Virus record (IMG/VR): IMGVR_UViG_3300030329_006583
Span: 1-64,000 of that record
DNA length: 64,000 nucleotides
Reading direction: 5' to 3' (one strand)
The translations under genes were made by a program, and so were the position numbers. The notes beneath the pieces are model-generated. The model saw only the letters and a list, made by a program, of their open reading frames with translations. It made no database searches and was not told the DNA's origin. Below are positions 32,201 through 54,066 of the stretch, piece after piece. The number at the start of each line of letters is the position of its first letter. Position 1 is the stretch's first letter.

Positions 32201-32546
32201 TGCCTGTTAACACAAACCCAGCGCTATTGCAAATACCTGCCTTCTCAAAATTTTCAATCTGTGCAGTGGTTTTATTAAGCCCGGTACCTAGCACCCTCAT
32301 AAAAGTGCACGCCTGGCGATTTTTCAAAAATTCCCTAACTGCATAAGGACCAAATTTACCAGGTTGCAATGTCCCAAATCGGGTTTGGAAATCTCCAAAA
32401 TCACCTACAGTCACGGGGACAAATGCAGGTCCCATTTCAGCAGTACCAATGACACCCGCGGGAATACCAGAAGGGGAAGTCTGTCGTTGAGACAGATCAA
32501 TTTCCCTATCAAAAAATCCGGGTGAACGAAATGTTTGCTCAGCCAT
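29265..32546 (-). CDS. Tail sheath protein, copy 1 (gp18-like)
   Basis: FRSPGF..REIDL, GPAFVP, WFAPAGFNRG, LYDARINPI, FGQKNL, DRINVRRML, LVPTRTVEFI. Confidence 0.92.
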   Translation of the reverse strand: MAEQTFRSPGFFDREIDLSQRQTSPSGIPAGVIGTAEMGPAFVPVTVGDFGDFQTRFGTLQPGKFGPYAVREFLKNRQACTFMRVLGTGLNKTTAQIENFEKAGICNSAGFVLTGTQKVGEPMPQPVGNIQFLCTRQFASASLEGIGFPIFSDNESCIGTAGGDDHVRLLRAVLMTASGTQFQVLTPRTDYATWRTFYGSTPGPMSANPNDSAIGSMPAFSFKLILSNSDGADFGEADGLPGLKIFTASLDPQSDNYISKILNTEPSKFQQKKHLLYVDFPVDTEVAQLAIPTGDPPGVFGTIQSPSVVLMSGSAFTSGDSGLPTETFVNLFGRFDTRFTTPKTTNFISQPFSGKEWDLFHFETLTDGAVGNTMFKISIANIVASVDESYPYPSFEVQVRDFYDTDLDPKILEKYPNVNLDRDSDRFIGRVIGDKKVSFNFDAEAEEERRLVITGRFANKSSRIRVQMADEVYNREVPKEATPFGFRGIPTLKTTDSLTDDLTTTIRRDGRKLGSELPLASTLTGDMRLAWGASYNGVLDNSLVSQSGSIVPPLPYRFKVTRGAVSTDSPVWIGRPGNDERTDSRFYWGVMNTSIAPTGTFGAGENEIFRANEGTTYNRIVDAYTKFIGIQKLDTLVTGTGADVFNNNKFTLARVALPNSLDASGHISQLTASAATHMKGAAYLRNKQPSVGLALLQDTSFDSVSTSYPGRISLATLLGSSSVEFNRFTTYAKFTNIFHGGFDGLNILNKEQGLMNDRATSNIGGGYASTSWTDTGLNTQPNGSVNPAGTSIDNSIVAAYRQAAMIMTDNRVTDINILAIPGIRSPLVTDFVADKARDNTQIFNVMDIPLYDENSDRVFAGPGIRPDVERTTIEFGLRNVDNNYSAVYFPDVHIQDNINNLITRVPPSVAALGALGFNDKNAKPWFAPAGFNRGSLEFVTNVDVRLSAADRDTLYDARINPIATFPNGGGPNTYVIFGQKNLQLAQTALDRINVRRMLIEVKRLIFKVARNLIFEQNNQATRSRFIAGASPLLALVQAQQGIEQFKIVMDDSNNTLEDIEGNRLNGRIVLVPTRTVEFIAVDFIITATGVSFE

Positions 32547-38499: not shown

Positions 38500-38530
38500 A
38501 AAAAAAAGGGGTGGCCATTGGCCACCCCTT
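38500..38530 (-). terminator. Rho-independent terminator after major capsid gene
   Basis: AAGGGGTGGCC/GGCCACCCCTT stem with U-run on the minus strand. Confidence 0.9.
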
Positions 38531-38552: not shown

Positions 38553-40505
38553 TTAGATGATGTTAAGGTCAAGAACCGTAACAGTACCGTAGAAATCGCT
38601 GCGAACCATCTTCTTACCGTAGCGAGTCATGACACCCTTACGTGGGGTGAAGTCCTCAGGAGCGAAGATAGTAGGTGTAACGATGAGCGGTACATACGGA
38701 GCGTAAACATAACCTGTCTCAAGATAGCTACCGCCCTTGAACCCAACAAGTACCTTGTTGCGAGGGAAGTAAGGATCTTTGTAAACCGTGAAACGATTGC
38801 TCAGTGTACCAACCTTCTCGGCACCGAGTGAGAACGGAGCACTGACCTGGCCTTCACCATCAAGGGTGTAAGCAGGACGATAGAGCACCGAAGCCTCAAG
38901 CATGGTAGCCACATCAGGTGAAACCACGATAAAGTTGGCAGAACCACGCAGTGTCAGGCGATGAATCTCATTGGCAACATCAATGATTGTCTCAACAAGA
39001 GTCTCGTACCACTCACGGACGGTGCCTGTGAAGGCGGGTCCCGGTGAGAGTGAGGAAGCTTTATCAACCGCAATACCTGTGGTGCGATTAACAAACTTGC
39101 CCGGAGCACGTGACCAGTAACGCTGTGTCTTCGCCTGTGTAAGAAGATCATTGAGGATTTCACGATCAATCTCGAGAGCAATCTGCTCGGAGAGGATCTG
39201 TGTAAGCTCAACTTCCGCATCCAGACTGTGATACGCATTCAAGTCCTGTGCAAGTTCCGGAGACCAGCGAGCACGGAGCTTACGGGTCACAGCAGTAACT
39301 GCAAGAGACTCAACCTTGATGTCAATATCCGGAATTGCCGGTGACGGTGTAGCACCGAAGTTAGACTCAAAGGCAGGAATGGTCAGTGTATCCCCATCTG
39401 CACCCACACTAAGTGCAGGATCAACCGGGAATGCCAAAGTCAAACCGGAATCAAATGAAGGAGAGGCATGGGTTGCATCAACACCATTACCGGAACAAAT
39501 CATAAGCAACGCGGTAGTGGCTGCAGCAGGATCTGCCATGGCATCAGGGGTAAATGTAGTACCATCCCATGTACCAATTTGGTTCAAACGTCGAACATTA
39601 AGCAGGTTGGTGCTAGCTTGCACAGCATTAGCGCCTACATTGGTCACGAATTTGAATCCTGTACCGCCGGCGACGGGGGCAACACCGTCATTTACGTAAA
39701 GACCGAAGTCCTTCACCATAGTCCAGTCAGCAACACCACCGTTGGCACTATCACCGCTAGCATCAAAATTCGCAGTCCTTGCGAGAACAGCGATGTATGA
39801 CGCGGGGCTGTTCGGGCCACCAACATCTTCAATGCGCGAAGTAAGTTGAGGATCAAACTGTAACAGTTTACCATCAGAACCTGTGGCCCTGAGGAATGTT
39901 CCATTTAAACCACCGCCTGTGATAGTGCTACCATCTCCGTATGCACCAGATACCACTAGATCAGCTGTGTCCATTGCGGCTGAATCATATACCCGTGAGT
40001 AACCAGAACCGGCCAGGTTATACTGCCCACCAATTCCTAAAGAACCTGATTGCACACCTTTACCTGTGGGCTCATTATATATGGAAGTACCACTAGCATA
40101 CACTGCGGCGCCCTGGGAGTTCCCTGGGAGTGCGGCAGTTGAACCATAAGTGTAATCAAGATAAAAGAGCAGGCCAGAAGGCAGGCTCATAGGCTGGATT
40201 GAAACCAGCTCATTTGCAACAAGGCCACCAAAAACGCGTCGAACGATTGGAAAAGCAATGTTGCTAAAACCACGAAGGTCACCAGAGGAAGTCATGGCAC
40301 CCCCACCGGTAGAAATGGAGCTTTGCTCCCTAAGTACTTGGCCAGCTTGGTTTTCAAGCATGCGTGACATGTTCTCTCTTTTGACTCCATCGAGTCCACG
40401 GAGAAGACCTGTGCGCGCCCACTTTTCAACTAGCCGACGGTTTTGGGAACCCAAGTGCCGTTGGCGGATTCCCTCTGTCAGTTGATCAAGTGAAAAATTC
40501 TTCAT
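38553..40505 (-). CDS. Major capsid protein (T4 gp23-like)
   Basis: LVEKW..TGLL, MLENQ, FPIVRRVF..LVANELVSIQPM..PSGL.FYLD, TRKLRARWSPELAQDL.A.H.LDAE.EL, EIDREI, YAPYVPL, PRKGVMTRYG. Confidence 0.97.
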   Translation of the reverse strand: MKNFSLDQLTEGIRQRHLGSQNRRLVEKWARTGLLRGLDGVKRENMSRMLENQAGQVLREQSSISTGGGAMTSSGDLRGFSNIAFPIVRRVFGGLVANELVSIQPMSLPSGLLFYLDYTYGSTAALPGNSQGAAVYASGTSIYNEPTGKGVQSGSLGIGGQYNLAGSGYSRVYDSAAMDTADLVVSGAYGDGSTITGGGLNGTFLRATGSDGKLLQFDPQLTSRIEDVGGPNSPASYIAVLARTANFDASGDSANGGVADWTMVKDFGLYVNDGVAPVAGGTGFKFVTNVGANAVQASTNLLNVRRLNQIGTWDGTTFTPDAMADPAAATTALLMICSGNGVDATHASPSFDSGLTLAFPVDPALSVGADGDTLTIPAFESNFGATPSPAIPDIDIKVESLAVTAVTRKLRARWSPELAQDLNAYHSLDAEVELTQILSEQIALEIDREILNDLLTQAKTQRYWSRAPGKFVNRTTGIAVDKASSLSPGPAFTGTVREWYETLVETIIDVANEIHRLTLRGSANFIVVSPDVATMLEASVLYRPAYTLDGEGQVSAPFSLGAEKVGTLSNRFTVYKDPYFPRNKVLVGFKGGSYLETGYVYAPYVPLIVTPTIFAPEDFTPRKGVMTRYGKKMVRSDFYGTVTVLDLNII

Positions 40506-40544
40506 TTTTTATTCTCCTATAAATAAAAATTGATTTAAATCGAG

Positions 40545-42233
40545 TTAGTTCTTGTTCGAAATTCCCGCAAGAACAGCCCATCGATCTACCTCATTTCCAT
40601 TGTTGGTCGCGCTTGCTGACCGGATTGATCTGGAAGACGAACCGAGCGTCCTAGCATTACGTCCCTCAGCCAACGACTTCTTGGAAGATCGCTTGTTCAG
40701 GGAAGTAGTCAAGCTCTTGTAAAGCAACTTTGCCTCACGAAGAGTTTTTGCATTATCCAATGCCTCAACAATTGCTCGTTGCTGCTTGGTGTTGAGATTC
40801 CTATTCTGCATTAACTTGTTAACATAAAGAAGCTTTGCATTAAACAGATTCATCTCAGTAAGTTGGGTCTTGAGGGTACCAACAGCCTTGCGGTACTCAA
40901 CCAACTTACGCTTAAGAGCACGATTGGTGCGGCTCTCATTCATTCTTTTTTGCCGACGAGATTCAACAACAGGTTCCGGCACATCATCGGGACCCAATTC
41001 ATCAGCCAAGGCATTAATGAGATCTTCCTCATCAATATCCAATATTACATCGCCAAGATCTTCAGCAGGTGATGGTACAAAAGTATCCACTGCCTCTTCT
41101 TGCTCACGAAGTTTACGCATGCGGTGTAATTCCCTGCGAAGAACGGCTTCATCGATTTCCAGGACTTCTTCTTCCTCGACATCAATTTCAATTTCCTCTT
41201 CACCGGCGGCTTCAGCTGAAACGTCTAGGCCTAGTGCATCACCAAGATCCTCAATGGCATCCTCGATATCTGCAACAGGCACAACTTCGCCAACGTCCTC
41301 AATGGGACTAGCCTCAACCTCAACCTCTTCCTCTTCAACTTCAACTTCCTCGTCTTGCTCCAAGAGCTCCTGCAAGTAAGCCTCCATTACCTCATCAGAA
41401 ACTTCCTCTTCGGCGGCGCCTTCCTCGTCCTGAACGACTACGTCAACGTCCAAGTCCTCTAGGCTAGCCGAATCCTCCACTCCCAATGCCTCAATGTCAT
41501 CTTCATCGAAAACAACATCGAACTCATCTAGATCTTTGTGATCACCTTCATATTGGCCTTCGAAAAGCCTATCAAACAAAGTGTTAGTTCGTCGTTTTGA
41601 CATTTTTTTTATCTCCTTAACGATATAATTGTATTTCAAACGAATTTCCTCAGTATTCGCCGTACCTTCAGTAAGTATTACGTCTTGACGTAAACTTATC
41701 ATTTCTTTTATCAACTGTGTGTAATATTTACGCACAGTCTCACGTAATGCGGAATTTTCACCAACATTCCCGATGTGTTTTACAAGGCGCTGTAAAACTT
41801 TGACATTACCAGATATTTTATCTAACGCCTCAGAAAGCCCGGTGGGACCATTCAATCTAGATGGATTCCTGATTAGTGAGGCCAATGCCCTTGCAGATTC
41901 TGCATTTAAATTCAAAAGTAAATCATCGTCCACTTCTTCATCACCTGTGTCATTTTCTACTTCCATATCACCGGTGGTCACTGCAATGCTAGCATCACCA
42001 TCAACATTAATGTTAACAGTTTGAGAAGAATCGTCAACATCGGTCTCATCTTCTTCTATATCTAGCGCATCTTCTATGTGCCCATATATTTCTTCATCTC
42101 CCATTAATTCATTTTCAATTAAAGAACGAATCTTGGGTGCCATTGCATCTATGATTTTGTTTTTTGCATTTTGCTCAGCCAATTCCTTAAGCTTTTTAGC
42201 ATCCGCAATTGCTTCATCGAACATTGTTGACAT
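40545..42233 (-). CDS. Prohead core scaffold protein (gp22-like)
   Basis: Very acidic, coiled-coil; C-terminal EMNLFNAKLLYVNKL...IVEALDNAKTLREAKLLY; immediately upstream of MCP. Confidence 0.8.
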   Translation of the reverse strand: MSTMFDEAIADAKKLKELAEQNAKNKIIDAMAPKIRSLIENELMGDEEIYGHIEDALDIEEDETDVDDSSQTVNINVDGDASIAVTTGDMEVENDTGDEEVDDDLLLNLNAESARALASLIRNPSRLNGPTGLSEALDKISGNVKVLQRLVKHIGNVGENSALRETVRKYYTQLIKEMISLRQDVILTEGTANTEEIRLKYNYIVKEIKKMSKRRTNTLFDRLFEGQYEGDHKDLDEFDVVFDEDDIEALGVEDSASLEDLDVDVVVQDEEGAAEEEVSDEVMEAYLQELLEQDEEVEVEEEEVEVEASPIEDVGEVVPVADIEDAIEDLGDALGLDVSAEAAGEEEIEIDVEEEEVLEIDEAVLRRELHRMRKLREQEEAVDTFVPSPAEDLGDVILDIDEEDLINALADELGPDDVPEPVVESRRQKRMNESRTNRALKRKLVEYRKAVGTLKTQLTEMNLFNAKLLYVNKLMQNRNLNTKQQRAIVEALDNAKTLREAKLLYKSLTTSLNKRSSKKSLAEGRNARTLGSSSRSIRSASATNNGNEVDRWAVLAGISNKN

Positions 42234-42255
42234 TAGTGTCTCCTCGTTTTAAAAG

Positions 42256-42262
42256 TAAATAT
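42256..42262 (-). promoter_or_regulatory. Candidate late-promoter motif ATATTTA (scaffold-MCP)
   Basis: 22 nt before the scaffold ATG. Confidence 0.5.
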
Positions 42263-42281: not shown

Positions 42282-42512
42282 TCATTTACTTTTTTTTGTT
42301 TGTTCCCTCTGGTACCTTCTTTTACCGGCATGTTTTTTCCGCCGGCGCCGTTCGCCCTTGGGTATAAAAAAACGTCGATCCGTGACTTCTTTCACTATCC
42401 CCTCTTCTTTGCATTTTTTTATAAACCGCCTAATAAGCTGTTCCTGGGTCCTTATTTTACCACCCAATTTCACGCTTACATTCACCGGTGTTTTTTTCCC
42501 CACAACTACCAC
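42282..42512 (-). CDS. rpsU: Ribosomal protein bS21
   Basis: LIRRFIKKCKEEGIVKEVTDRRFFIPKGERRRRKKHAGKRR matches the bS21 pattern (LxRFKxxxxxxGxxxExxxRxxxxxP/KxxxRxxxK). Alternative GTG start at 42503 has AGGTGG upstream. Confidence 0.85.
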   Translation of the reverse strand: MVVVGKKTPVNVSVKLGGKIRTQEQLIRRFIKKCKEEGIVKEVTDRRFFIPKGERRRRKKHAGKRRYQREQTKKSK

Positions 42513-42534
42513 CTGTTTAAAATACTGTTAATGT

Positions 42535-43167
42535 TTAAATATTTTGTGTGTTTTGATCATGTATTCTTTGCATTATTTTTTCTATTTTAGCCAAAGTCAT
42601 TTCATCATCACTTAAAATATCCTGTAATCTATATGCACCAATGCCTTCATCATAATCAACCGCAATCTGAGAGGGTGGAGGGGCGTGTGAATACCCTTGT
42701 TCAGTACCTGTACGTTTAGCCGCTGCAGGATCAATTGAAGGATTAGTTGAAGAGCCACCTGAAATTGCCTGTATTTTTTTACTCCACCCCGGAAAGGGAA
42801 CAATACTATTTTTCATATATGGAAGCGAAGACTCTGAAACGCCCCCTATACCCGGAGTATTTCCTGCAACAAAATAAAAAGGATCTGTTTTATTTTTTGC
42901 CAAAGAATCAACCGGTAAATAACCCATGTTAATTTTCTTTACAAATACGTCCAATTCATCTTCATCCATGCTAGTTACGTCTTCACCATCCTCATAAAGA
43001 TCTGGTGCCATATAAGGAAAATCAGAACCTGCATTCCTAGGTGCATTAAAACCGGTTGGATATAATTGACCATAACCTAACCCTTTTCTGTCGTCATAAA
43101 ATACCGGGCTATGGTTTCGATAGGTACCATTAATATTTACCTTTGCTTTTTTTGGAATGTGGGGCAT
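42535..43167 (-). CDS. Hypothetical protein in head module
   Basis: Start revised to MPHIPKK (ATG 43167), directly after the upstream stop; Gly/Pro/Asp-rich. Confidence 0.65.
   Translation of the reverse strand: MPHIPKKAKVNINGTYRNHSPVFYDDRKGLGYGQLYPTGFNAPRNAGSDFPYMAPDLYEDGEDVTSMDEDELDVFVKKINMGYLPVDSLAKNKTDPFYFVAGNTPGIGGVSESSLPYMKNSIVPFPGWSKKIQAISGGSSTNPSIDPAAAKRTGTEQGYSHAPPPSQIAVDYDEGIGAYRLQDILSDDEMTLAKIEKIMQRIHDQNTQNI
42536..42542 (-). promoter_or_regulatory. Candidate late-promoter motif ATATTTA (bS21)
   Basis: Overlaps the stop of the upstream gene; 23 nt before GTG 42512. Confidence 0.45.
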
Positions 43168-43168
43168 C

Positions 43169-43810
43169 TTACCCAACCTCGGGTGGTGATGTAGGTTCAA
43201 GTGTCATGCCAGATTTACCTTTTAAATACGTACCCAAAACATCCGGTGGTGCTTCATGATCTTGATAATTTTCCTGAAGTGACCAGCCAGGTGTACCTGG
43301 ATGGAATGGATTAACAATTCTTTGTGCACCATCATGTGGGCTCACATTTGTTCCCTCACCTACAAAAGGTGATGATCCTATTTTTGCTGGTGAATTGGCG
43401 TCTTCTTTTTGTTCATCATTAGGGGCAGGTTGTGTATAAGGATCTGCGTTAGGAGCACTATTGAGGTTTGGAACAAATGAACTAAATGGATCACCTGCTT
43501 GGTACACATATGTATCACCGAGCCCAAAATCATAAGAAGGTGCACCTTTGTAATCGCGACTATATGGCACCGGGAAACCCCAATAAGAAGTAGATTCAGG
43601 CACATCACCCCTCATCACTTCTTTTGTAAATTTCAGGCTAACACTTACGTCAGTAAGATTATTCGTATTGCTAATATTGGGGTCACCATTAATGGGGCTG
43701 GCTGGAAATTGTTCTGAAAGCGCTGTGGAATTAGAGGTGGAATAACCATTAACCGGCCCTAAACTGGCTGCATCGGTTGGGTTATCAATTTCCACCACAC
43801 CATGCTTCAT
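43169..43810 (-). CDS. Pro/Gly-rich hypothetical protein, paralog B
   Basis: Shares LGPVNGYSxSNxxxLS..F..SPI, GDP.S..VPN..S and LG.YL with the adjacent gene. Confidence 0.7.
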   Translation of the reverse strand: MKHGVVEIDNPTDAASLGPVNGYSTSNSTALSEQFPASPINGDPNISNTNNLTDVSVSLKFTKEVMRGDVPESTSYWGFPVPYSRDYKGAPSYDFGLGDTYVYQAGDPFSSFVPNLNSAPNADPYTQPAPNDEQKEDANSPAKIGSSPFVGEGTNVSPHDGAQRIVNPFHPGTPGWSLQENYQDHEAPPDVLGTYLKGKSGMTLEPTSPPEVG

Positions 43811-43815
43811 TTATC

Positions 43816-44340
43816 CTATCCATCCGTATAGAGTGACTGGCCAGGTTGATCGGCAGGGGAGAGGTAATCCCCTAATTTAACGCTGGCAATTGCGTTCGAT
43901 GTTTTAGATGGGTTCTCAGTACCAGCACCCTTACCAAACGTTCCGTTAGTGGGTTGTTGACCAAATCCTTCTGGCGGAGCCGGTATATCTGTTGGGTTTG
44001 TTGATCCTGGGCCTGGTGATGCTGGATTTGGAACGTACGGAGAAGCGGGATCGCCACCGCCGCCGGTCTTCACATTGTCCATGTCTGGCGCGCCACCAAA
44101 TTTAGGATCAAATTCAGGAAAATCAGGATTAGAGCCTTTCCATGCAGATGAAGGTTTTTGCAGCACCGTCTCAAATTCGCCGGTAGCCTCATTATCATCA
44201 TAGGTAATTGTCTTTCCAATAATCGGTGAAAATGTAAAAATCTTGCTCAGGGTTTCTGTATTAGATTGTGAATAACCATTCACCGGACCAAGGCCGCCTT
44301 CACCTTTATTAGGTTCCAGCATAGTTTGTTTTGAAGACAT
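43816..44340 (-). CDS. Pro/Gly-rich hypothetical protein, paralog A
   Basis: LGPVNGYSQSNTETLSKIFTFSPI, GDPASPYVPNPAS, LGDYL; GGGAG SD. Confidence 0.7.
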   Translation of the reverse strand: MSSKQTMLEPNKGEGGLGPVNGYSQSNTETLSKIFTFSPIIGKTITYDDNEATGEFETVLQKPSSAWKGSNPDFPEFDPKFGGAPDMDNVKTGGGGDPASPYVPNPASPGPGSTNPTDIPAPPEGFGQQPTNGTFGKGAGTENPSKTSNAIASVKLGDYLSPADQPGQSLYTDG

Positions 44341-45138: not shown

Positions 45139-45747
45139 TTATTTCCAATCCAATATATCGTTAAATAGACGATCAACCCGATCGGTTTGATTAAAAACCT
45201 TTTTAAGATCTTCCCTTCTTACCTCACGGCCTTCTTTCATCATAAATGCGCCAGGAGTTGATGGTTCTGAAACAAAATCCCAACATATCAATTGGAAATC
45301 ATCTTGTACGATATCATAATCGCCTTGCTGGTTTGTGGAACCAACACCTCGTGAAGATATACCTAATGTTACCCCAGATTCAACAAGGCTTTTGAGTATT
45401 TTGCCACAAGGGGTATCCAACAGTTCAACCACCCCGTAAACAACATCACCCTCCATATACGCCTCACGAATGATATGAGAAACGTTTTTTAATTCTACAA
45501 CAGAACTATCTGGGTGATCGCATTCTCCTAGTGCACGATTTTCACGAATAAACTTTTGGTAGTTTCTAATTTCTCTCTCTAAAATCTCGCGTGGATAAAC
45601 ACGGCCATTTTGATTTAGGGTTTCCGCCTTTTGGAGAACACCTTTCATCATAATCTTACCATTGTTTTTTTCCATTGACTCCTTTATCATATCTTTGTTA
45701 TATTCAAAAGGCGACCAGTCGGTAATTACTTTTAAATTAGCACTCAC
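45139..45747 (-). CDS. Prohead core protease (T4 gp21-like)
   Basis: GVLQKAETLNQNGRVYP, ALGECDHP, NVSHII, LGISSRGVGS, WDFVSEPSTPGAFM. Confidence 0.95.
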   Translation of the reverse strand: MSANLKVITDWSPFEYNKDMIKESMEKNNGKIMMKGVLQKAETLNQNGRVYPREILEREIRNYQKFIRENRALGECDHPDSSVVELKNVSHIIREAYMEGDVVYGVVELLDTPCGKILKSLVESGVTLGISSRGVGSTNQQGDYDIVQDDFQLICWDFVSEPSTPGAFMMKEGREVRREDLKKVFNQTDRVDRLFNDILDWK

Positions 45748-46606
45748 TTTGATTCTCCAAAAGTTCCTGTTTCAAACTTGATATAGTTAATAGGCGAGAA
45801 ACGGTAGCATCATCAATTCTCTTTACCTGAAAATTTTCAATCTTTTTTATAACATTGCCTACTTTTTCATTTAATACTTCGTTCTTGCATGTTAAAGCAA
45901 ATTCACGAATCTCATCAACAGCCAATTTTTTAAGAGTATTGTATTTTTCAATTTTTGCAGGATCATTTAATGATGTCTCAAACACGTATTGTTTAATAAT
46001 ACCTTTCTGTTCCTCATTTAAAGACTCACCATATTTTTTATTGAATTTTTCATTCATAATTTTAAGTGTCAATACGTTAATATCTTTATTGTCGTAATCC
46101 GGTGTTACAGAACCAGAGGTAGTACCCTCTGCTAGTAACCAATTTATGACATCATTTTCATATTTAACAACCCTGGCAATGTCTGCATGTTCCCTCAATC
46201 TCCAATCATTTAATAATGTTTGGATTGTGGCATAACTACGATATTCCTTAATACGTTGGTTATAAAAATTGGAATCATCCAGCGTATGATTAATTTTTTT
46301 AATTAACGCGGATTTTTCATGCCTAAGTTTATTACCGTCAAATTTTCTAGATGCATTTCTAGCATCCTCAAGAATCCTATTAGCCAATGCCTCCCGGGGA
46401 ACACGGGTTTTTACTAGTGCATTAAACAATCTAAATTCACGATATAATTGACTCCCCGGTTTAAAACATTCTCTAATTATTCTCAACGTTATCCTGGCTT
46501 TTACATAATCTTTTTCAAGCACAGCTTTGGACATATATTTTGTTAATTGTTCAAATATGATCCCGACATTTCGTTTTTTATTGTGAGATCCTTTACTCAT
46601 TTTCAT
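45737..46606 (-). CDS. Hypothetical helical protein between portal and protease
   Basis: 289 aa, overlapping both neighbours; N-terminal HNKKRNVGIIFEQL. Confidence 0.7.
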   Translation of the reverse strand: MKMSKGSHNKKRNVGIIFEQLTKYMSKAVLEKDYVKARITLRIIRECFKPGSQLYREFRLFNALVKTRVPREALANRILEDARNASRKFDGNKLRHEKSALIKKINHTLDDSNFYNQRIKEYRSYATIQTLLNDWRLREHADIARVVKYENDVINWLLAEGTTSGSVTPDYDNKDINVLTLKIMNEKFNKKYGESLNEEQKGIIKQYVFETSLNDPAKIEKYNTLKKLAVDEIREFALTCKNEVLNEKVGNVIKKIENFQVKRIDDATVSRLLTISSLKQELLENQSEC

Positions 46607-48548
46607 TCTCTCCGTCTGTGGCTACATCTTCCGCCAACAATGATGATACCTTTTTTTTCAATCCAAGTTTTTTCCCAAGATTTCCTAAAGTATTCTCCAA
46701 TTCAAAAGTCATTTTTGCGTTTTGACCAATCTTAGTATCTAAATAAGTATTCATAAAAGAATCTTCCAATCCCTCCCCAAACGGATTTTTCAAAGACTCT
46801 GCATCATAAGGCTGATTCATCGAATCTTGTTTCCTGGCAGGACCGCCAACACTGGCCATTTTTGCAAGATTAGGCATATGGGTAGAGGCCGGTCCGGAAG
46901 TTACTTTTCGGCTTTTCCTAAGAGGCTCGTTAAAAACATTTCTAATCTGTTTCTCAGCCTTGGCAGGTGCGTCTAAATCGCCTAAGGACAATTTAAGGAT
47001 ATCATCATCATCTTCCTCATCATCTGTCTCGTCGGTTTCATTAATTTCTTCCGACGATTTTGCTATCAATAATTGACCTTGTGGTTCATCAGCCGAGAAT
47101 AGGCCTCCGCCTGCTTCTCCTTCTGGTTCAGGGGCACCGGCTTCAGGTGATTCAGCTGAAACATTCTCTAATTCTGAATCTCTTACTTTATCTTCTTCAC
47201 GACCTTCTTCAATCCTTTCTACCTCGAGATCTGTAAGGCCCATAACATTTTTGCGTATCCAGTATCTGTCTACCACACCTTCAGGTGCTGCGGCGGCAAT
47301 TTCAAATCTTGTCCTGATCAATTCCAATTTTTGTTGTTGGGCAATTGATGAAGGATTAGATAATGCCAATTCAAAATCAATCAAGTCATCCCCTTCATAA
47401 CCATGACAATAAAGGTGAATCATTGCTAATTTATTAAGTTCAGAAATAACCGTTTTTTGAATACGTTGTATTGAACGTGAAAAACGAATGTCTTCCTGTG
47501 CCAAGGTTGCCTTGGCACCGACTTCTTCATCATAACCTAAATATGCCCTAGGGATTTTAAGTGCAGCAAAAAGCTTTTTCTGAATATATTCCACATCCTC
47601 GATGGCGGCGGTGTTTTGACCACCCGCCAATGTATCAATCCTTGTTCCTGATTCACCGCCACGAACGGGAAGAAAATAATCTTCATCTACACTAAGCGGA
47701 TTGTATCTTAAATCAACCTTGCCCGTTGTTTTATCCACCACCTGACTACGTTTAAGACTTGTTTGTGCCTGTTGTAAATAAGTCGCAACATCCTCAGGTG
47801 GGACGTTACCAACATCAATATAAAAAACACGCCGTTCAGGTGCACGAATAACACGATAAACCAACATGGCATCTTCAATCAAGATAAGCTGACGCCAAAT
47901 TCTACGCGCTGATTCCAGAACGCTTGTACCATACGGAAGAAAAGCATCGTTACCTAAAAGCCTAAAATGACTAACTTGCCAATTCTCCAATACTGTATTT
48001 CCCTGAGTCATCCACCTAAAACGCACAGCCGCGGGGTTGTTGGGATCAAAATTTTCTTCCCTTTCAATCTCTGAAATGGCAATTGGAAATGCATTAATAA
48101 CCCCATATTCAGGTGAGATATCATTAAAAAGAAAAAAGTCTCCATATTTACACAGGTTTCTAACCCACATAACCAAATTGAATTCAACATTTAGGATGTC
48201 ATAAAAAAGATTGTCCAGCAATTCATGAATACGCCTGTTTTCCGAGTATATATGCAAAACTCGTCCGCGTTCATCAGGAGAAACAGTTTCCTCGGAGTAT
48301 ATGTCAAGTGCAGAAGCAATCTCAGGTGTAGCCTCCATTTCACTGAAGTCACTATACCTTGACATTCTATCAAAAGCACCATAGGCACTTAAGGTACTAT
48401 TATAAACATCGCTGTGAGCGCGCTGGAATAATTCAAGGGCTGTACTAGCACCTGGTTCGGCAAAATTACGTACTTTACGTTTAATTATCGGGCCGGCACG
48501 AAATAATTGTGTCAACCTCTGAAATAGGTTTTGGGTTTGTCTTGGCAT
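46593..48548 (-). CDS. Portal protein (T4 gp20-like)
   Basis: MEATPEIASALDI, VRNLCKYGD, YGTSVLESARRIWRQL.L.EDAML.YR..RAPERRVFYIDVGN, EDYFLPVRG, IDTLAGG, LKIPRAYL, AQEDIRF; long acidic C-terminal extension. Confidence 0.95.
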   Translation of the reverse strand: MPRQTQNLFQRLTQLFRAGPIIKRKVRNFAEPGASTALELFQRAHSDVYNSTLSAYGAFDRMSRYSDFSEMEATPEIASALDIYSEETVSPDERGRVLHIYSENRRIHELLDNLFYDILNVEFNLVMWVRNLCKYGDFFLFNDISPEYGVINAFPIAISEIEREENFDPNNPAAVRFRWMTQGNTVLENWQVSHFRLLGNDAFLPYGTSVLESARRIWRQLILIEDAMLVYRVIRAPERRVFYIDVGNVPPEDVATYLQQAQTSLKRSQVVDKTTGKVDLRYNPLSVDEDYFLPVRGGESGTRIDTLAGGQNTAAIEDVEYIQKKLFAALKIPRAYLGYDEEVGAKATLAQEDIRFSRSIQRIQKTVISELNKLAMIHLYCHGYEGDDLIDFELALSNPSSIAQQQKLELIRTRFEIAAAAPEGVVDRYWIRKNVMGLTDLEVERIEEGREEDKVRDSELENVSAESPEAGAPEPEGEAGGGLFSADEPQGQLLIAKSSEEINETDETDDEEDDDDILKLSLGDLDAPAKAEKQIRNVFNEPLRKSRKVTSGPASTHMPNLAKMASVGGPARKQDSMNQPYDAESLKNPFGEGLEDSFMNTYLDTKIGQNAKMTFELENTLGNLGKKLGLKKKVSSLLAEDVATDGENENE

Positions 48549-48601: not shown

Positions 48602-50203
48602 TTAAACTAACCAGGATAAATCTCCATATACAGGATGATAACTACCACTAACCGGTGCAGGCGTTTCATTCAATATAACGGGAAGGAATGGATTCAATCT
48701 TTTCTGTACCCATGGACTCTCATGTGATACTTGATTTTGTGTCTCATTAACCTTCATTGCATCTAACATGGCTTTGTTAACATCAACCGTGTATTTATTG
48801 TAAGAAGGTGTGGTATCATATAACCAAACCCCAATAGCGACTGACATTACAAGATCATCATTTTTTCCTTTTTGTGCCTGTGCCTTTGCACCTTTCCAAA
48901 CAAATGTTTTTAATTCTTCATATAATCGGGAGGAAGGAATTTTAAGTTGACGGTTTCTTATCACTTCCTCCAATTTGGTAAGAATCTGGTTACGGCTTTG
49001 GCCCGAGGTGGTAAAACCTATTTTGTGTAAATTGCTTTCCCCTGAATACATGCTAGCATAACGATCTTTTTGTTTCTTAAAATATAAATTAGGATATCCT
49101 AATTCTTGCAATTTCATAATAACCGCATAGCCGTAGGTGTTATTTTCAGGACACATTAATGCCTTATTATAGCGCATACCAGCTTCATTTAAAAGCAATG
49201 CAAACTGATCAGGGGGTAATTTACCTTTATATTCTGCAACAATCTCAGATTCCATCGTGTCAATTACATGAAACGCAGAATAATCTGCGGCATCCCCACG
49301 TGCAATATCTGCAGAAATAATATACCTGTGCTCTGTTAATGCATATTTCCAAACCCATACCCCCATATCAGGGCCCCATTTTTCCAGCGGGTTCTTGACA
49401 CCCACCCTAATGTATTCAAGGTCATCGGCGGTTAGAAATGTATCACCACTGGCTGAAAAATCACATAAAAATTCTTGAGCCACTTGCTTTTTAGAAAAAC
49501 TTTTGGATTCATTTTCAAACCATTCTTCATCATGTTCCGGATGAACCCACCATGGTAATTTAATAGGGTTAAACTCATTTTCTCCGGCTTCAGCTTTTAC
49601 ATATAATTCATGGTATTGTCCTCCCACACCATTAGGGGTGGATAAAACAATAGACCTACCACCTGTTGAGATTGTAGGATATAAACCCATCCATAACTCA
49701 TCAAAATTTCTAACAAAAGCTGCCTCATCCACAATCAATAATGATAACGCCTCTGAACGACCTGCATCATCTGAGGTAGGTACCGCTTTAATTTGTGAAC
49801 CATTACTGAATTCCAACGATTGTTTATTATTGGAAACTATTTGTGGAAGAACCAACCATGGTGGCAGGTTTTTTAATGCAACCTTAACTTTTTTAATGAA
49901 ATTTTGTGCAACTGCCAATTTAGTTGCAATGATTAAAATATTCTTATCTTTATAAAAAATAGCCAACCAAACAGCATATGCAGCAGAAAGAGTTGAAATA
50001 CCTAATTGCCTAGATTTCAAAATAATATTGAATCGATGATCAACAAAATCCTTGAGACAATCATTCTGAAAACTGTATGTTTTAAAGGGAATAAGCCCCC
50101 TTGTGGGGTGCTGAATTTGTACATATTTATTTAAAAAATAAACAGGATCCTTACCACATTTGAGTATCTCTTTTACTTGGCGTTGTTTGGTAGTCAAAGC
50201 CAT
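48602..50203 (-). CDS. terL: Terminase large subunit (gp17-like)
   Basis: ILKSRQLGIST, LLIVDEAAF, LSTPNG, QEFLCDF, ISADIARGDAADYSAF, PENN, NDDLVMS; TAATG overlap with upstream gene. Confidence 0.95.
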   Translation of the reverse strand: MALTTKQRQVKEILKCGKDPVYFLNKYVQIQHPTRGLIPFKTYSFQNDCLKDFVDHRFNIILKSRQLGISTLSAAYAVWLAIFYKDKNILIIATKLAVAQNFIKKVKVALKNLPPWLVLPQIVSNNKQSLEFSNGSQIKAVPTSDDAGRSEALSLLIVDEAAFVRNFDELWMGLYPTISTGGRSIVLSTPNGVGGQYHELYVKAEAGENEFNPIKLPWWVHPEHDEEWFENESKSFSKKQVAQEFLCDFSASGDTFLTADDLEYIRVGVKNPLEKWGPDMGVWVWKYALTEHRYIISADIARGDAADYSAFHVIDTMESEIVAEYKGKLPPDQFALLLNEAGMRYNKALMCPENNTYGYAVIMKLQELGYPNLYFKKQKDRYASMYSGESNLHKIGFTTSGQSRNQILTKLEEVIRNRQLKIPSSRLYEELKTFVWKGAKAQAQKGKNDDLVMSVAIGVWLYDTTPSYNKYTVDVNKAMLDAMKVNETQNQVSHESPWVQKRLNPFLPVILNETPAPVSGSYHPVYGDLSWLV

Positions 50204-50614: not shown

Positions 50615-50947
50615 TCACTTTATCCTATATGTTGGTTGATTCATGAGAAAGTTCACATGTTCATCCACTTGTTCCTTTGTTGGGCGCCATCCATCCATCC
50701 ACGCATGCCTATTGCCTTGTGCCCATTGAAACATGCAACTTTGACAACATTTATATTTATCGTAGGAAATTGTATCATTAATATCTTTCATCAAAAAACC
50801 GCATATGCTACAATCCACCACAAAATCAACTATGATCTCTTGACCTTTAATTATTTTAATGTTTGGAGATACTTCCTTTATTATTCTACCACCAAAATAT
50901 GTATTCCATTCCTCACTCATAAACAATCTTTGCATCCTTACCGACAC
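50615..50947 (-). CDS. Small CxxC...CxxC putative Zn-finger protein
   Basis: CSICGF ... CCQSC; overlaps the end of the SbcCD gene; exact start uncertain. Confidence 0.6.
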   Translation of the reverse strand: MSVRMQRLFMSEEWNTYFGGRIIKEVSPNIKIIKGQEIIVDFVVDCSICGFLMKDINDTISYDKYKCCQSCMFQWAQGNRHAWMDGWRPTKEQVDEHVNFLMNQPTYRIK

Positions 50948-53900
50948 TGGTTATATCTAATACATTATCCACCGCGTCCTTAACTGCATCAACATGTGAT
51001 ATAACCATAATATTTTTAAACCACTTCTTTAAAGAATTCAATAAACGATTGCATGCTTCAACATTCATTTCATCCAAAGCACCGAACCCTTCATCAATAA
51101 TAAGCATATTAGTCTTAGGTAAACATGAAATATTTATTAACGCAACCCGAATGGCCAGACTAGCCATCATCTTTTCCATTCCTGATGCACATTCAATTAT
51201 GCGTTGAGAATCCCCGTAATTAATAACAATATCCATATCATTTGAACCGGATTCAGAACTTAGCTCAACCGTAAAGCCCACAACGCCTTGTAGGATTTTA
51301 GATATCTCTGCATTAATAATAGGTAATTGAGATGTTATAATTTGCAACGGTATACCTTTTTTGGAAAATGCACCCATCATAATATCATAGCAACGCCATT
51401 CCTCGTACAATTTCCCGTATTTGATCTTTTCGCTCTGTGAAGTTTTTATTTCCTTTTGCAGAAGTGCAATAGATTCAGAGGCAGATATCCTTTTGGCGTC
51501 AAGTTTTGCTATTTTATCACGCAAAGCCTGAATCTTTCGGCGTAAACTGGAAACTGCTTTGGCATTTGAATCAGAGGAAACGCGTAATTTCATACTAGAC
51601 AAATTGTTTTCAGATTCTGACAATAATTTACCGGCTTTGCTTTTTTGTGTCAACAATTGATTAAACAACATTTCGTCCCTTGAATCCTCTAATAATAATT
51701 CTGCCTCTTGCTTTAAAACATCATCATATTTATCAATTTTTACCTGTAATTGCTGGTCTTCTATTTTTTTCAGTGCACGCCTACTAGCCCTTACGTTGGA
51801 TATTAATTCATTCACTGCCTTTTGTTGTGATTCCATCAAAGACTTGTTGGAATGTGAATCCTTAATAAATTTACACGTAGGGTATTTATCCCCGCACGGT
51901 ACCTCGCCCAATCTTTTTACGGATTTTTTTTGCTCTTTTAAGATTGTTTTTTCTTTTTCGTGAACATGTTCCAATTCTAATAAACTCTTCTCCAAATCTC
52001 GTTGGATCTCTAGTTGTTCCTTCAGTTCATTTATTGGAAATTGTTCCTTAAGGGTGCTGATTCTTTCAATTTTTAAAAGATTTTCCTCCCTTCTTTTTTC
52101 CATCGCCTGTATTTTTTCATTAGAAATAGCTAACGTAGAATTAATCTTTTCAATTTTTTTTACCTGATCGTCAACATCCCGTTGGGTAACGGCATCTTTA
52201 TCTTTGTGTGTTGCCAAAGTGATGTTTAATTCCTCCAAATTGGCACGGGCATCTGCATATTGACTATCTAGCTCTTCCTTCCGTAATTGTTTGTTTATTA
52301 CCCTATCTTCTTTTTCAGCAATTAAGGTATCCCAATCTTTATCAGGCACATTTTTTAGCATCCCTTTAATATCCGCAGAATCTTCTTTTGCAAGGTATGC
52401 CATCTTCTCAAATACATCAAGATCCAAAAATTTATTTAGAATTGCCTTTCTTTGTGTTGCACGATTCTTGATAAAGGTATTCATCTCACCCTGGCTAGCA
52501 AGTGATGTAAGAAGAAAATCATCTGCAGTCCCAACCAAAGTTCTCATTGTTTTTTCAGTTTCACGACGCTGTTCACCATTTAAATCCTGGATAACTTCAC
52601 CGGCAGAATTCAATCTAGACAAATTAAGGTGTGTAACAGCATGAACTTTACCTGCCCTGGTTTGGTGTTTAACAGATTGACGCTCAGCCCTATATAGATT
52701 ACCGTTCACCACAAAATCCACTTCCCCGAGACAATGACCTTTTCGGGAATTTATAACATGTAAATTTTTGATAGGACCACGATCTGTGGTATTAAATAAG
52801 GTGTACATCAGCGCGCCTGCAATGGATGATTTACCCGATCTGTTTTTACCAAAAATACCGGTGATCCCATTTAAATTATCAAAATTTACTACATTCTCTT
52901 TACCATAAAGAAATAAGTTGTCAAATTGCAATCTCTTAATTGAAAAACGTGTATTCCTAACAGTCGATTCTTGGGTTGCTAATTGATTAACGTATTTAGT
53001 GACTAGCTTTTCAATTCTTTCCCATGTATCTAGAGATATATCACTTTCTGAATAATAATTCTTTAAAAGCTTGACATGTGTTTTGGGATCACGTAAATCC
53101 TCATGAAATATTTCACCATCAGCAGTTTGAATTGCAGAACGGAATTCATCATGTTGTTCATATTTAAAAACAATCTCGTAAGGCTTTTTTTCCTTTTTTA
53201 ATGCAGCATACAGTTGTTTAATTTCAGCCTGTGATATCAAATCATTAGCACGAATACGGTACCGTGATTCATTAGGGTGTTGACGCGCTGCATCCAATAT
53301 AGTCTCCGCGTCGCCGTCCCAATCCAATGTCACAAATGGGTGTTTATGAATGACGGGATAAAACGTGCTTTTAAAATTATCCCTATCATCAATCTCCCAA
53401 TATAAAAACCCTTTTCCAGGATCTTCTCCGTAATTCTGTTGGATTGTACTCCCGCAATATGCAATACGTTTTTCGTCATCCAGATATTGAACTTTGTGAA
53501 TATCTCCCAAGAATGCAAAATCAAAGCCGTCAAAAAAAGCTGCGTCAACCTCACCATCTATTTGCCAATCAATATCAGTTGCAGAACCTTGCACACCACC
53601 ATGGTACAAGGCGATATTGATTTCACCTTTCACCGGTTTTACATCTTCCCAGCCTTCTTCGTCAAAACACGAAAACACCCCCCAGTTAATTCCGGCAATT
53701 CCGGTTGGGTATATACCAGACTTTTTGTAAAGATGAATTCTAGGGTTATCTAGTGCCTTGATAATAGGTGTAATTGCATCCTGGCGGTGTTTATTGAGAA
53801 CCAGGCCGTCATGATTGCCCAAGATAACATGAGTGGGTGCCAATTCAGCCAAACCTGTAAACCACCAATTCAAGATATCGATCAATTCAGGTGAAATCCC

Positions 53901-54059: not shown

Positions 54060-54066
54060 ATTAATC

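What the first reader, a model, noticed from the sequence alone, without database searches (positions are those of the whole stretch)
42282..42542. Ribosomal protein bS21 directly upstream of scaffold and capsid genes in a strongly SD-led late region
Seen: bS21 has its own late-type motif and sits beside scaffold and MCP; late genes carry strong AGGAG/GAGGAG SDs (MCP, scaffold, tube, sheath 1, paralogs). Known: bS21 occurs among structural genes of large phages and is expressed late; in Bacteroidia the host bS21 C-terminus helps occlude the anti-SD. Inference: phage bS21, with an Arg/Lys-rich C-terminal helix more like SD-using bacteria, could swap into ribosomes and favour SD-led phage mRNA. 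The NrdJ N-terminus looks Bacteroidota-like to me from memory, but the host is not established.
Basis: partly seen in the sequence, partly recalled or inferred. Interest (0 to 1): 0.6.

Follow-up and report, generated by a model that had tools for sequence, protein, structure and literature searches.

The report
Phage ribosomal protein bS21 in head operon
A large marine T4-like phage carries its own copy of ribosomal protein bS21 inside its capsid-gene operon, a known kind of phage gene, but its genome points to a host that already reads Shine-Dalgarno (SD) sites, so it probably supports late protein synthesis and does not unlock a blocked ribosome.

Summary
A real bS21 gene (42282-42503, minus strand, 73 aa; Pfam PF01165 above cut-off) lies 48 nt upstream of the scaffold gene and then the gp23-type capsid gene. 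It has an ATATTTA late-type motif 30 nt upstream and an AGGTGG Shine-Dalgarno (SD) site.

The gene is old and vertically inherited. About 35 marine viral contigs, Microcystis phage Mel-JY01 and huge phage LR756508.1 all carry bS21 in the same slot.

The proposed mechanism is not supported.
- SDs are genome-wide: 52% of genes against 9% in the control.
- SDs are strongest on genes behind sigma70-type early promoters (GTGCAAA-N-TGnTATAAT), so SD-led translation works before any late bS21 is made.
- Flavobacterium phage immuto, from the same lineage, has almost no SDs (4-5%).
- LR756508.1 carries bS21 in the slot but has only 6% SDs.
- The basic C-terminus is confirmed (pI 11.9).
- The position matching F. 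johnsoniae Tyr54 is Arg. The window's Tyr lies two residues later and is unique to this protein within the family.

The host is unidentified but is probably not Bacteroidia. The best reading is a late-made bS21 that supplements or replaces host bS21 on 30S subunits. This is a new member of a known kind, of modest interest.

The parts
42282..42503 (-). bS21 (rpsU-like) coding sequence, 73 aa plus TGA stop. An alternative in-frame GTG lies at 42512.
   Evidence: Pfam PF01165 at 33.9 bits against a cut-off of 27. The closest homologues are 73 aa and start MGKK. dN is 0.16 with saturated dS against L002. The AF2 model has helices at 23-36 and 52-75.
42509..42514 (-). AGGTGG Shine-Dalgarno site, 5 nt upstream of the GTG start at 42503
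   Evidence: Duplex dG with CACCUCCUUU is -7.3; the GTG at 42512 gives +0.6. Coordinates were checked.
42536..42542 (-). ATATTTA late-type promoter motif, overlapping the TAA stop of the upstream gene
   Evidence: It lies 30 nt upstream of the ORF start. The same motif lies 29-39 nt upstream of 9 gene starts (Poisson P 3e-8 to 2e-3). The motif also precedes late genes of immuto and Mel-JY01. It is not conserved upstream of bS21 in the relatives.
42535..43200 (-). Conserved head-module protein of about 221 aa, function unknown, directly upstream of bS21
   Evidence: No Pfam family. It is found next to bS21 in the related contigs.
43169..44340 (-). Two paralogous Pro/Gly/Asn-rich proteins (213 and 174 aa) that share an N-terminal GPVNGYS motif. 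They may be prohead core or internal proteins.
   Evidence: ORF translations. They are conserved in the slot between protease and bS21.
40545..42233 (-). Scaffold (gp22-like, acidic, 562 aa), with GAGGAG SD at 42240-42245 and ATATTTA at 42256-42262
   Evidence: Position, composition and conservation. SD dG is -8.7.
38553..40505 (-). Major capsid protein (gp23 family), with AGGAG SD at 40514-40518 and TATTTAT at 40519-40525
   Evidence: Pfam PF07068 at 256.8 bits. SD dG is -7.3. Coordinates were checked.
38506..38530 (-). Strong intrinsic terminator (11-bp stem with 8 GC pairs, then a T run) that closes the head operon after the capsid gene
   Evidence: No comparable minus-strand terminator lies between the portal gene and the capsid gene.
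45139..45747 (-). Prohead core protease (gp21 family)
   Evidence: Pfam PF03420 at 93.7 bits.
46593..48548 (-). Portal protein (gp20 family)
   Evidence: Pfam PF07230 at 265.9 bits.
48602..50203 (-). Large terminase (T4 type)
   Evidence: Pfam PF03237 at 50.6 bits.

Best explanation
This is a genuine phage-encoded ribosomal protein bS21. It is a long-standing, vertically inherited gene of the late head operon (portal, protease, core proteins, bS21, scaffold, capsid) in a marine far-T4-like jumbo phage. The record is 267 kb and about 78% complete.

The gene is transcribed with the scaffold and capsid genes, by read-through of the operon and possibly also from its own ATATTTA late motif. It is translated from a GTG start with an AGGTGG SD.

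The protein keeps the bS21 core and a very basic C-terminal helix, as in SD-using bacteria. It most likely binds host 30S subunits in place of, or in addition to, host bS21. bS21 is a loosely bound, exchangeable, late-assembling protein that supports SD/anti-SD-dependent initiation. The phage copy would keep ribosomes competent for initiation when late structural proteins are made in bulk.

The host already reads SDs. No unlocking of a sequestered anti-SD is involved.

Shown here: gene identity, position, conservation, purifying selection, genome-wide SD use and the basic C-terminus. Inferred: late timing, ribosome incorporation and the benefit to the phage.
For: - Identity: Pfam above cut-off. 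PDB sequence matches to bacterial and plastid bS21 reach E 4.8e-10 with the family profile. The model has the two-helix layout.
- Conservation: the order portal-p289-protease-p137-p92-p174-p221-bS21-scaffold-MCP recurs in about 35 IMG/VR contigs at 38-80% bS21 identity. It also recurs in metagenome contigs, in Mel-JY01, where the gene is annotated RpsU, and in LR756508.1.
- Selection: dN is 0.16 with saturated dS against the closest relative.
- Operon: all genes are co-oriented with short gaps, and the one strong terminator lies after the capsid gene.
- Late motif.
- SD-using host: a GGAG/GAGG peak lies at -13 to -9, and 52% of genes have an SD against 9% in the control. Early-promoter genes have the strongest SDs. 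The Flavobacterium phage immuto control has 4-5% (Fisher P 1.5e-20).
- Literature: the bS21 of phage HTVC008M enters E. coli ribosomes (PMC6375957). bS21 is transcribed with late genes in other phage clades (PMC9723584). bS21 is exchangeable and acts in initiation (PMC9578407).
Against: No expression data exist for this phage. The one metatranscriptome from a sample that holds it shows nothing usable. Ribosome binding is untested, and the host is unidentified. Ribosomes carrying the HTVC008M bS21 were nearly inactive in an E. coli in vitro assay (PMC6375957), so a simple 'more bS21 is better' reading is not established. The ATATTTA motif is not conserved upstream of bS21 in relatives. The phage family has no close bacterial counterpart, which may indicate a specialised function and not a like-for-like replacement.
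Confidence: 0.55

Rival explanations
1. Selective hijack. The phage bS21 replaces host bS21 and biases initiation toward phage leaders over host mRNAs. The bias would come from clade-specific N-terminal features: a short basic extension and a 3-4 residue insertion ahead of helix 1, the region that lies over the SD/anti-SD helix.
For: Alignment with bacterial bS21 shows a conserved N-terminal extension (KKxPxNVSV) and the insertion (LGGKIRT) in the phage family. The same idea was proposed for other phages (PMC7162821, PMC9723584). Francisella bS21 paralogues change the translation of subsets of mRNAs (PMC9578407).
Against: Phage leaders here carry ordinary AGGAG-type SDs, which host mRNAs of an SD-using bacterium would share. 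No phage-specific leader element was found beyond the SD and the promoter motifs.
Confidence: 0.2
2. Packaged internal protein. The small, extremely basic protein, encoded among prohead core genes, is loaded into the capsid. It would then either be injected to act on ribosomes from the start of infection or serve as a DNA-neutralising head protein.
For: The gene sits between the protease and core-like genes and the scaffold, where T4 encodes prohead core proteins (established T4 gene order). Whole-protein pI is 11.4. Chen et al. raise virion delivery as a possibility (PMC9723584). Delivery with the DNA would also explain why early genes can be SD-led if the host were SD-blind.
Against: I saw no N-terminal targeting or cleavage signal in the sequence (by eye, not tested). 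The whole length aligns to canonical bS21. The ribosome-binding core residues are conserved across the family.
Confidence: 0.1
3. The host is a Bacteroidota with a sequestered anti-SD. The phage bS21 lacks the occluding C-terminus, displaces host bS21, frees the anti-SD and switches ribosomes to SD-led late phage mRNAs.
For: The C-terminal domain is very basic and the Tyr54-equivalent residue is Arg. F. johnsoniae ribosomes that lack bS21 or its C-terminal helix do favour SD-led mRNA (PMC9976891, PMC13000457). The nearest cultured relatives by capsid and portal include a Flavobacterium phage and a Rhodothermus phage.
Against: SDs are genome-wide and strongest on early-promoter genes. Early promoters are of the TGnTATAAT type with a GTGCAA -35 element, unlike the Bacteroidota TAnnTTTG consensus (established knowledge). 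Flavobacterium phage immuto, of the same lineage, has 4-5% SDs and no bS21. LR756508.1 has bS21 in the slot and 6% SDs. 33 of 35 related bS21 loci are SD-rich.
Confidence: 0.04
4. Non-ribosomal moonlighting. The protein acts off the ribosome as an RNA-binding regulator or as a decoy, for example against a host defence that targets translation.
For: bS21 has been reported as a component of a non-ribosomal RNP (PMC12054373). Chen et al. mention countering a host stall of phage translation (PMC9723584).
Against: Nothing in the sequence or its context points to this. The conserved positions are those of the ribosomal family.
Confidence: 0.06

Closest known systems
bS21-encoding phages of freshwater Bacteroidetes (Chen et al. 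2022, PMC9723584)
   Same: These are large myoviruses, up to 331 kb, with bS21 embedded in the conserved TerL/portal/protease/MCP block. They carry chaperones. The proposed role is late-stage substitution into host ribosomes.
   Different: In those phages bS21 is on the opposite strand to the structural genes, resembles Flavobacteriia bS21 and keeps an aromatic residue at Tyr54. Here it is co-oriented, not detectably similar to F. johnsoniae bS21 and has Arg at the equivalent position. This phage is marine and SD-rich.
Microcystis phage Mel-JY01 RpsU (PP395634.1)
   Same: It belongs to the same far-T4 lineage (capsid 45%, portal 43% identical). bS21 lies in the same slot between protease and scaffold/capsid. 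Its genome is SD-rich (42-55%) and carries the same (A)TATTTAT late motif.
   Different: Its bS21 is only 26% identical and has a canonical KPS motif and a less basic C-terminal domain (pI 10.3). The genome is smaller, at 190 kb.
Uncultured huge phage LR756508.1 (484 kb; LR-series accession, which I take from memory to be the Al-Shayeb et al. 2020 set, not verified)
   Same: It has the closest capsid protein in the phage collection (49.7%). bS21 lies immediately upstream of scaffold and capsid.
   Different: Its genes are almost SD-free (6%). Its bS21 is of a different type: no Cys, Met at position 54, and weak matches to Borrelia-like and Bacteroidia-like chains.
Pelagibacter phage HTVC008M bS21 (Mizuno et al. 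2019, PMC6375957)
   Same: It is a T4-like marine myovirus that encodes bS21, and the only phage bS21 shown to enter ribosomes (of E. coli).
   Different: That gene is 54% identical to the bS21 of its host, which suggests a recent capture. The window's family has no bacterial relative above about 45% identity in what was searched. A tblastn search against the phage collection gave no match.
Flavobacterium johnsoniae bS21 (7JIL; Jha et al. 2021, McNutt et al. 2023)
   Same: Same protein family and the same two-helix layout.
   Different: The F. johnsoniae protein has a much less basic C-terminal domain and the signature Tyr54, which stacks on A1534 to sequester the anti-SD. The phage protein has neither.
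Flavobacterium phage vB_FspM_immuto (NC_055915.1)
   Same: It belongs to the same lineage. The head module and the replication module (PolA, gp32, RecA, exonuclease, DnaB, RNR) are in the same order. It has the same late motif and a GroEL.
   Different: It has no bS21 in the slot and essentially no SDs.

Membership tests
Ribosomal protein bS21 (Pfam PF01165) | Sequence matches the family model above the curated threshold | tested here: met
   33.9 bits against a cut-off of 27. 36.3 bits in the six-frame search.
Ribosomal protein bS21 (Pfam PF01165) | Small (about 55-90 aa), highly basic, two alpha-helices joined by a coil | tested here: met
   73 aa with pI 11.4. The AF2 model has helices at 23-36 and 52-75 and mean pLDDT 78.6. 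The Foldseek search was uninformative.
Ribosomal protein bS21 (Pfam PF01165) | Conserved core (L-R-R-F-K-x-x-C-x-K-x-G) and a KPS/T motif before the C-terminal helix | tested here: inconclusive
   The core is present as LIRRFIKKCKEEG. The KPS/T motif is replaced by IPKG in the window protein, while more distant family members keep KPS.
Ribosomal protein bS21 (Pfam PF01165) | Incorporation into the 30S subunit near the 3' end of 16S rRNA | not testable with these tools
   This needs ribosome purification or cryo-EM from infected cells.
Bacteroidia-type, anti-SD-sequestering bS21 | Signature Tyr54, 12 residues after S42 of the KPS motif | tested here: not met
   The equivalent residue is Arg. 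The window's Tyr lies at +14, equivalent to E. coli H56 and Acinetobacter Y56, and is unique to this protein among about 36 family members.
Bacteroidia-type, anti-SD-sequestering bS21 | [quoted passage not shown] | tested here: not met
   The C-terminal domain has pI 11.9 with 13 K/R and 2 D/E in 23 residues. The family median is 11.8. The definition comes from PMC7797042.
Bacteroidia-type, anti-SD-sequestering bS21 | Detectable sequence similarity to F. johnsoniae bS21 (7jil_z) | tested here: not met
   7jil_z is absent from the PDB hits of the protein (E <= 1) and of the family profile (E <= 10). Gammaproteobacterial, plastid and Firmicute bS21 chains are found. The chain is in the library, because it matches the LR756508.1 bS21.
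bS21 phage clades of Chen et al. 2022 | bS21 inside the conserved TerL/portal/protease/MCP block | tested here: met
bS21 phage clades of Chen et al. 2022 | bS21 on the strand opposite to the structural genes | tested here: not met
   It is on the same (minus) strand as all its neighbours. The paper's statement is quoted.
bS21 phage clades of Chen et al. 2022 | Bacteroidetes host (CRISPR spacer, gene affinities) and Bacteroidetes-like bS21 | tested here: not met
   The genome is SD-rich with TATAAT-type early promoters, and its bS21 is unlike the Bacteroidia type. The host itself was not identified.
bS21 phage clades of Chen et al. 2022 | bS21 transcribed together with late structural genes | not testable with these tools
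   No RNA run holds the region. Only the operon structure and the late motif support this.
T4-like head morphogenesis module | gp20 portal, gp21 protease, gp22-like scaffold, gp23 capsid and T4-type TerL, in order | tested here: met
   Pfam PF07230, PF03420, PF07068 and PF03237. The scaffold is assigned by position and composition only.

The most novel reading that the evidence does not exclude
The host is, after all, an SD-blind member of the Bacteroidota or the wider FCB group. The phage bS21, which has Arg in place of Tyr54 and a highly basic C-terminal helix, is delivered with the virion or made very early. It displaces host bS21, frees the anti-SD and converts the ribosome pool into one that prefers the SD-led mRNAs of the phage, early and late alike. 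This would be ribosome reprogramming by a single swapped protein.
Probability: 0.04. Interest if true: 0.85.

Novelty: new member of a known kind. Interest (0 to 1): 0.3.

Why it matters
Phage-encoded bS21 is the most common ribosomal protein in viruses, and its role is still untested in any natural phage-host pair. This window adds a marine clade, apparently distinct from those described, in which bS21 holds a fixed slot in the head operon. The gene is co-oriented with the structural genes and has diverged far from any bacterial bS21 that was searched.

The comparison inside one phage lineage may be useful:
- SD-rich genomes with bS21: this phage and Mel-JY01.
- An SD-free genome with bS21: LR756508.1.
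- An SD-free genome without bS21: the Flavobacterium phage immuto.

Within this small sample, carrying bS21 does not track SD usage. That argues against explanations centred on the SD and narrows what an experiment should test. It does not open a new mechanism.

Tried and rejected
- DNA and tblastn searches of the phage collection with the region and with bS21 gave no match. The low-complexity filter probably masks the basic protein.
- A genome-contig scan for bacterial bS21 with the family motif IRRFIKKC found none.
- The second genome-contig scan, with the phage PEPCK, gave only hits at 49% identity or less in scattered phyla. It also gave a 120-aa fragment at 62% in a Neomarinimicrobiota MAG contig. 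None of this supports a host call.
- The nearest DnaK relatives (71-92%) are phage genes of the same clade. Bacterial ones are about 65% or less, and look-ups gave no organism names.
- Sampling 61 Marinisomatota and 201 Pseudomonadota genomes with the phage bS21 gave 45% identity or less and about 27 bits in both, so there is no donor signal.
- The tools give no taxonomy for genomes reached this way, and I could not reach a Bacteroidota or cyanobacterial genome.
- RNA evidence: no RNA run holds the region. Laying a metatranscriptome from the same sample gave only three short pieces 90-95% alike in the capsid gene.
- The Foldseek search of the AF2 model gave nothing significant, as expected for an extended ribosomal protein.
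- A promoter control in immuto was inconclusive. Neither TGnTATAAT nor TAnnTTTG is enriched in its first 50 kb, so the promoter argument for the host rests on established knowledge and not on this control.
- The supplement of Chen et al. gave no usable bS21 alignment.
Full report
WHAT IS THERE

The window is the first 64 kb of a 267,118-bp IMG/VR virus record. CheckV estimates it at 78% complete. It has 40% GC and 8 tRNAs, and nearly every gene is on the minus strand. DNA runs that hold the region are marine metagenomes.

At 42282-42512 (-) there is an ORF that matches Pfam Ribosomal_S21 above the curated cut-off: 33.9 bits against 27, and 36.3 bits. Its closest homologues are 79-81% identical, 73 aa long and begin MGKK. 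The first GTG has no SD (dG +0.6). The second GTG, at 42503, has AGGTGG 5 nt upstream (dG -7.3). I therefore place the gene at 42282-42503.

CONTEXT

The neighbours form a T4-type head module on the same strand:
- TerL, 48602-50203
- gp20 portal, 46593-48548
- a 289-aa protein
- gp21 protease, 45139-45747
- five small conserved proteins, two of which are paralogues
- bS21
- an acidic 562-aa scaffold, 40545-42233
- gp23 capsid protein, 38553-40505

Gaps are short: 22 nt before bS21 and 48 nt after it. The only strong minus-strand terminator lies just past the capsid gene, at 38506-38530. bS21 is therefore inside the head operon.

LATE MOTIF

ATATTTA lies 30 nt upstream of the bS21 ORF and 29 nt upstream of the scaffold start. 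It lies 29-39 nt upstream of 9 gene starts in the genome. Between 0.65 and 2.7 would be expected by chance, depending on the background used. TATTTAT abuts the SD of the capsid gene.

The same (A)TATTTAT motif precedes 7 of 20 late genes in Flavobacterium phage immuto and 5 of 20 in Microcystis phage Mel-JY01. It is a plausible late promoter core for the whole lineage, analogous to TATAAATA in T4. It is not conserved upstream of bS21 in the related contigs. A dedicated bS21 promoter is thus possible for this phage, but it is not a feature of the clade.

CONSERVATION

A pattern scan of IMG/VR found 35 loci that encode a relative. In essentially all of those long enough to show it, the order portal-p289-protease-...-p221-bS21-scaffold-capsid is the same. 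Every word-search homologue whose context I examined is also a phage gene in this slot.

Mel-JY01 has an annotated RpsU in the slot (Pfam 45 bits). The 484-kb uncultured phage LR756508.1, which has the closest capsid protein in the phage collection, has a bS21 ORF directly upstream of its scaffold and capsid genes. Flavobacterium phage immuto shares the head-module and replication-module order with the window phage, but has an unrelated acidic 75-aa ORF in the slot.

Against the closest relative, dN is 0.16 and synonymous sites are saturated. The gene is old, under purifying selection and inherited with the head module.

No bacterial genome among about 185,000 species carries the family motif IRRFIKKC. 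Sampled Marinisomatota and Pseudomonadota bS21 genes reach at most about 45% identity.

SHINE-DALGARNO USE

I used my own ORF calls and duplex energies against CACCUCCUUU.
- 52% of genes whose first start is ATG have dG <= -6 in the -18 to -4 stretch, against 9% of internal ATG controls. GGAG/GAGG peaks sharply at -13 to -9.
- The head/tail block (1-48.6 kb) is indeed SD-rich at 74%. The region 137-242 kb reaches 57%.
- That second region holds about 20 copies of a clear promoter, GCGTGCAAA-N14-15-TGnTATAAT. Each is followed by an AAGGAGG-type leader.
- Genes directly behind these sigma70-type promoters have stronger SDs (median -8.2, 78% at or below -6, n = 18) than genes behind the late motif (median -5.9, 50%, n = 18). 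Mann-Whitney P is 0.027.

SD-led initiation is therefore a property of the whole genome. It is needed before any late-expressed bS21 could act.

CONTROLS WITHIN THE LINEAGE

| Phage or locus set | Host as recorded | bS21 in slot | Genes with SD |
|---|---|---|---|
| Immuto | Flavobacterium | no | 1 of 20 in the head region; 4% of 85 in its first 50 kb; A-rich leaders |
| Mel-JY01 | Microcystis elabens | yes | 42-55% |
| 33 of 35 related bS21 loci | unknown | yes | 33-83% (controls 0-29%) |
| L017 (29% GC) and L035 | unknown | yes | 9-10% |
| LR756508.1 | unknown | yes | 6% |

Two conclusions follow. These phages mirror the SD habit of their hosts, and the window phage's host reads SDs. Having bS21 in the slot is not coupled to SD use.

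THE C-TERMINUS

Jha et al. define the Bacteroidetes type by two features: a C-terminal domain (after S42 of the KPS motif) that is much less basic than in other phyla, and Tyr54.

The window protein's C-terminal domain has 13 K/R and 2 D/E in 23 residues, with pI 11.9. The family median is 11.8. AF2 predicts a helix at residues 52-75 with high confidence.

To place Tyr54, I chained ungapped alignments:
- window to Acinetobacter bS21 (offset 11);
- E. coli to the LR756508.1 bS21 (1-59 to 1-59);
- 7jil_z to the LR756508.1 bS21, both ending at residue 53;
- the KPS anchor.

By this chain Tyr54 corresponds to an Arg in the window protein. The window's single Tyr sits two residues later, at the position of E. 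coli H56 and Acinetobacter Y56. Among about 36 family members it is Tyr only in this protein.

The F. johnsoniae chain 7jil_z is not found by the protein or by the family profile even at E <= 10. Acinetobacter, Psychrobacter, Pseudomonas, E. coli, plastid and Firmicute bS21 chains are found.

HOST

The host is not identified.
- The phage encodes DnaK, GroEL, PEPCK, PrkA, DnaE, peptide deformylase and a sigma70-family factor.
- Their nearest relatives are either phage genes of the same clade or bacterial genes too distant to inform a host call.
- TATAAT-type early promoters argue against Bacteroidota, whose consensus is TAnnTTTG (established knowledge).
- A caveat applies: the phage's own sigma factor might read these promoters.
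- My attempted promoter control in immuto was inconclusive.
- The case for an SD-using host rests mainly on the SD statistics and the immuto control.

HOW IT MOST LIKELY WORKS

bS21 is made with the scaffold and capsid proteins. It most likely joins host 30S subunits as a supplement to, or replacement for, host bS21, and so sustains SD-dependent initiation during bulk late synthesis. bS21 is loosely bound, exchangeable and involved in initiation (PMC9578407). One phage bS21 has been shown to enter E. coli ribosomes (PMC6375957). Late co-transcription has been seen in other clades (PMC9723584). All functional steps for this phage are inferred.

Rivals are:
- selective translation through the clade-specific N-terminal extension and insertion;
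- packaging as a head internal protein;
- an off-ribosome role.

COMPARISON AND VERDICT

This is the known phenomenon of phage bS21 among late structural genes (Mizuno 2019, Al-Shayeb 2020, Chen 2022). It differs from the Chen clades in several ways: the gene is co-oriented and not on the opposite strand, it is not Bacteroidetes-like, it has no aromatic residue at position 54, and the phage is marine and SD-rich.

I file it as a new member of a known kind.

Noticed in passing
G000 138-241 kb (outside the window), e.g. 161258, 154593, 153705, 191621, 177407: About 20 copies of a well-defined promoter, GCGTGCAAA-N14-15-TGnTATAAT, lie on the coding strand. Each is followed by an AAGGAGG-type leader and clusters of small ORFs. 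They are probably the early promoters. Whether host sigma70 or the phage's own sigma factor reads them is open.
   Followed up: partly
G000 229725-230507 (L052:5725-6507, minus strand): The phage encodes a sigma70-family factor with regions 1.2, 2 and 3 and only a weak region 4. It lies between GroEL (230814-232424) and peptide deformylase (228157-228630) and DnaK (226030-227925). The same cluster occurs in a related 201-kb contig (L067).
   Followed up: partly
window 721-4116 (-): The large subunit of ribonucleotide reductase is interrupted by an intein with an HNH endonuclease domain, and carries a C-terminal TSCPD domain.
   Followed up: no
L085:26714-26950 (LR756508.1 169713-169949): The 484-kb uncultured phage with the closest capsid protein has a bS21 ORF in the same slot. 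Its genes are almost SD-free (6%), and its bS21 is of a different sequence type: no Cys, Met at position 54. This could be a replacement allele or long divergence.
   Followed up: partly
L017 (IMGVR_UViG_3300015607_004829) and L035: These two related bS21-bearing contigs are SD-poor (9-10%). L017 has only 29% GC. They may infect a different kind of host from the rest of the clade.
   Followed up: no
L073-L076 (Marinisomatota genomes G001, G056, G044, G055): The bacterial rpsU genes of these Marinisomatota carry extended SDs (AAGGAGGTGA or GGGAGGTGA) about 7-9 nt upstream of the start. This resembles the rpsU-specific SD of Flavobacteriales. I did not check whether it is general SD use or rpsU autoregulation.
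   Followed up: no
window 43169-43810 and 43816-44340 (-): Two paralogous low-complexity proteins share an N-terminal GPVNGYS-SN-T-LS motif. They are conserved between protease and bS21 across the clade and are candidates for prohead core or internal proteins.
   Followed up: no
window 25939-29226 and 29265-32546 (-): Two tandem tail-sheath paralogues of about 1095 aa each. Both have sheath domains only in the C-terminal third.
   Followed up: no
window 50913-54083 (-): A single 1056-aa ORF combines an Mre11-like phosphoesterase domain with Rad50/SbcC-like ATPase motifs. T4 encodes these as two separate genes, gp47 and gp46.
   Followed up: no
G000 217843-219312, 127777-129759, 255274-258876, 164460-173507: Host-like metabolic and stress genes are present: ATP-dependent PEP carboxykinase, PrkA kinase, a DnaE-type Pol III alpha subunit and several large proteins with MopE-like metal-binding repeats.
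   Followed up: partly
bS21 starts in L002, L010, L011, L012, L020, L026, L027 and the window: bS21 begins with GTG or TTG in many clade members, while the neighbouring capsid and scaffold genes use ATG. This may keep bS21 output below that of the structural proteins.
   Followed up: no
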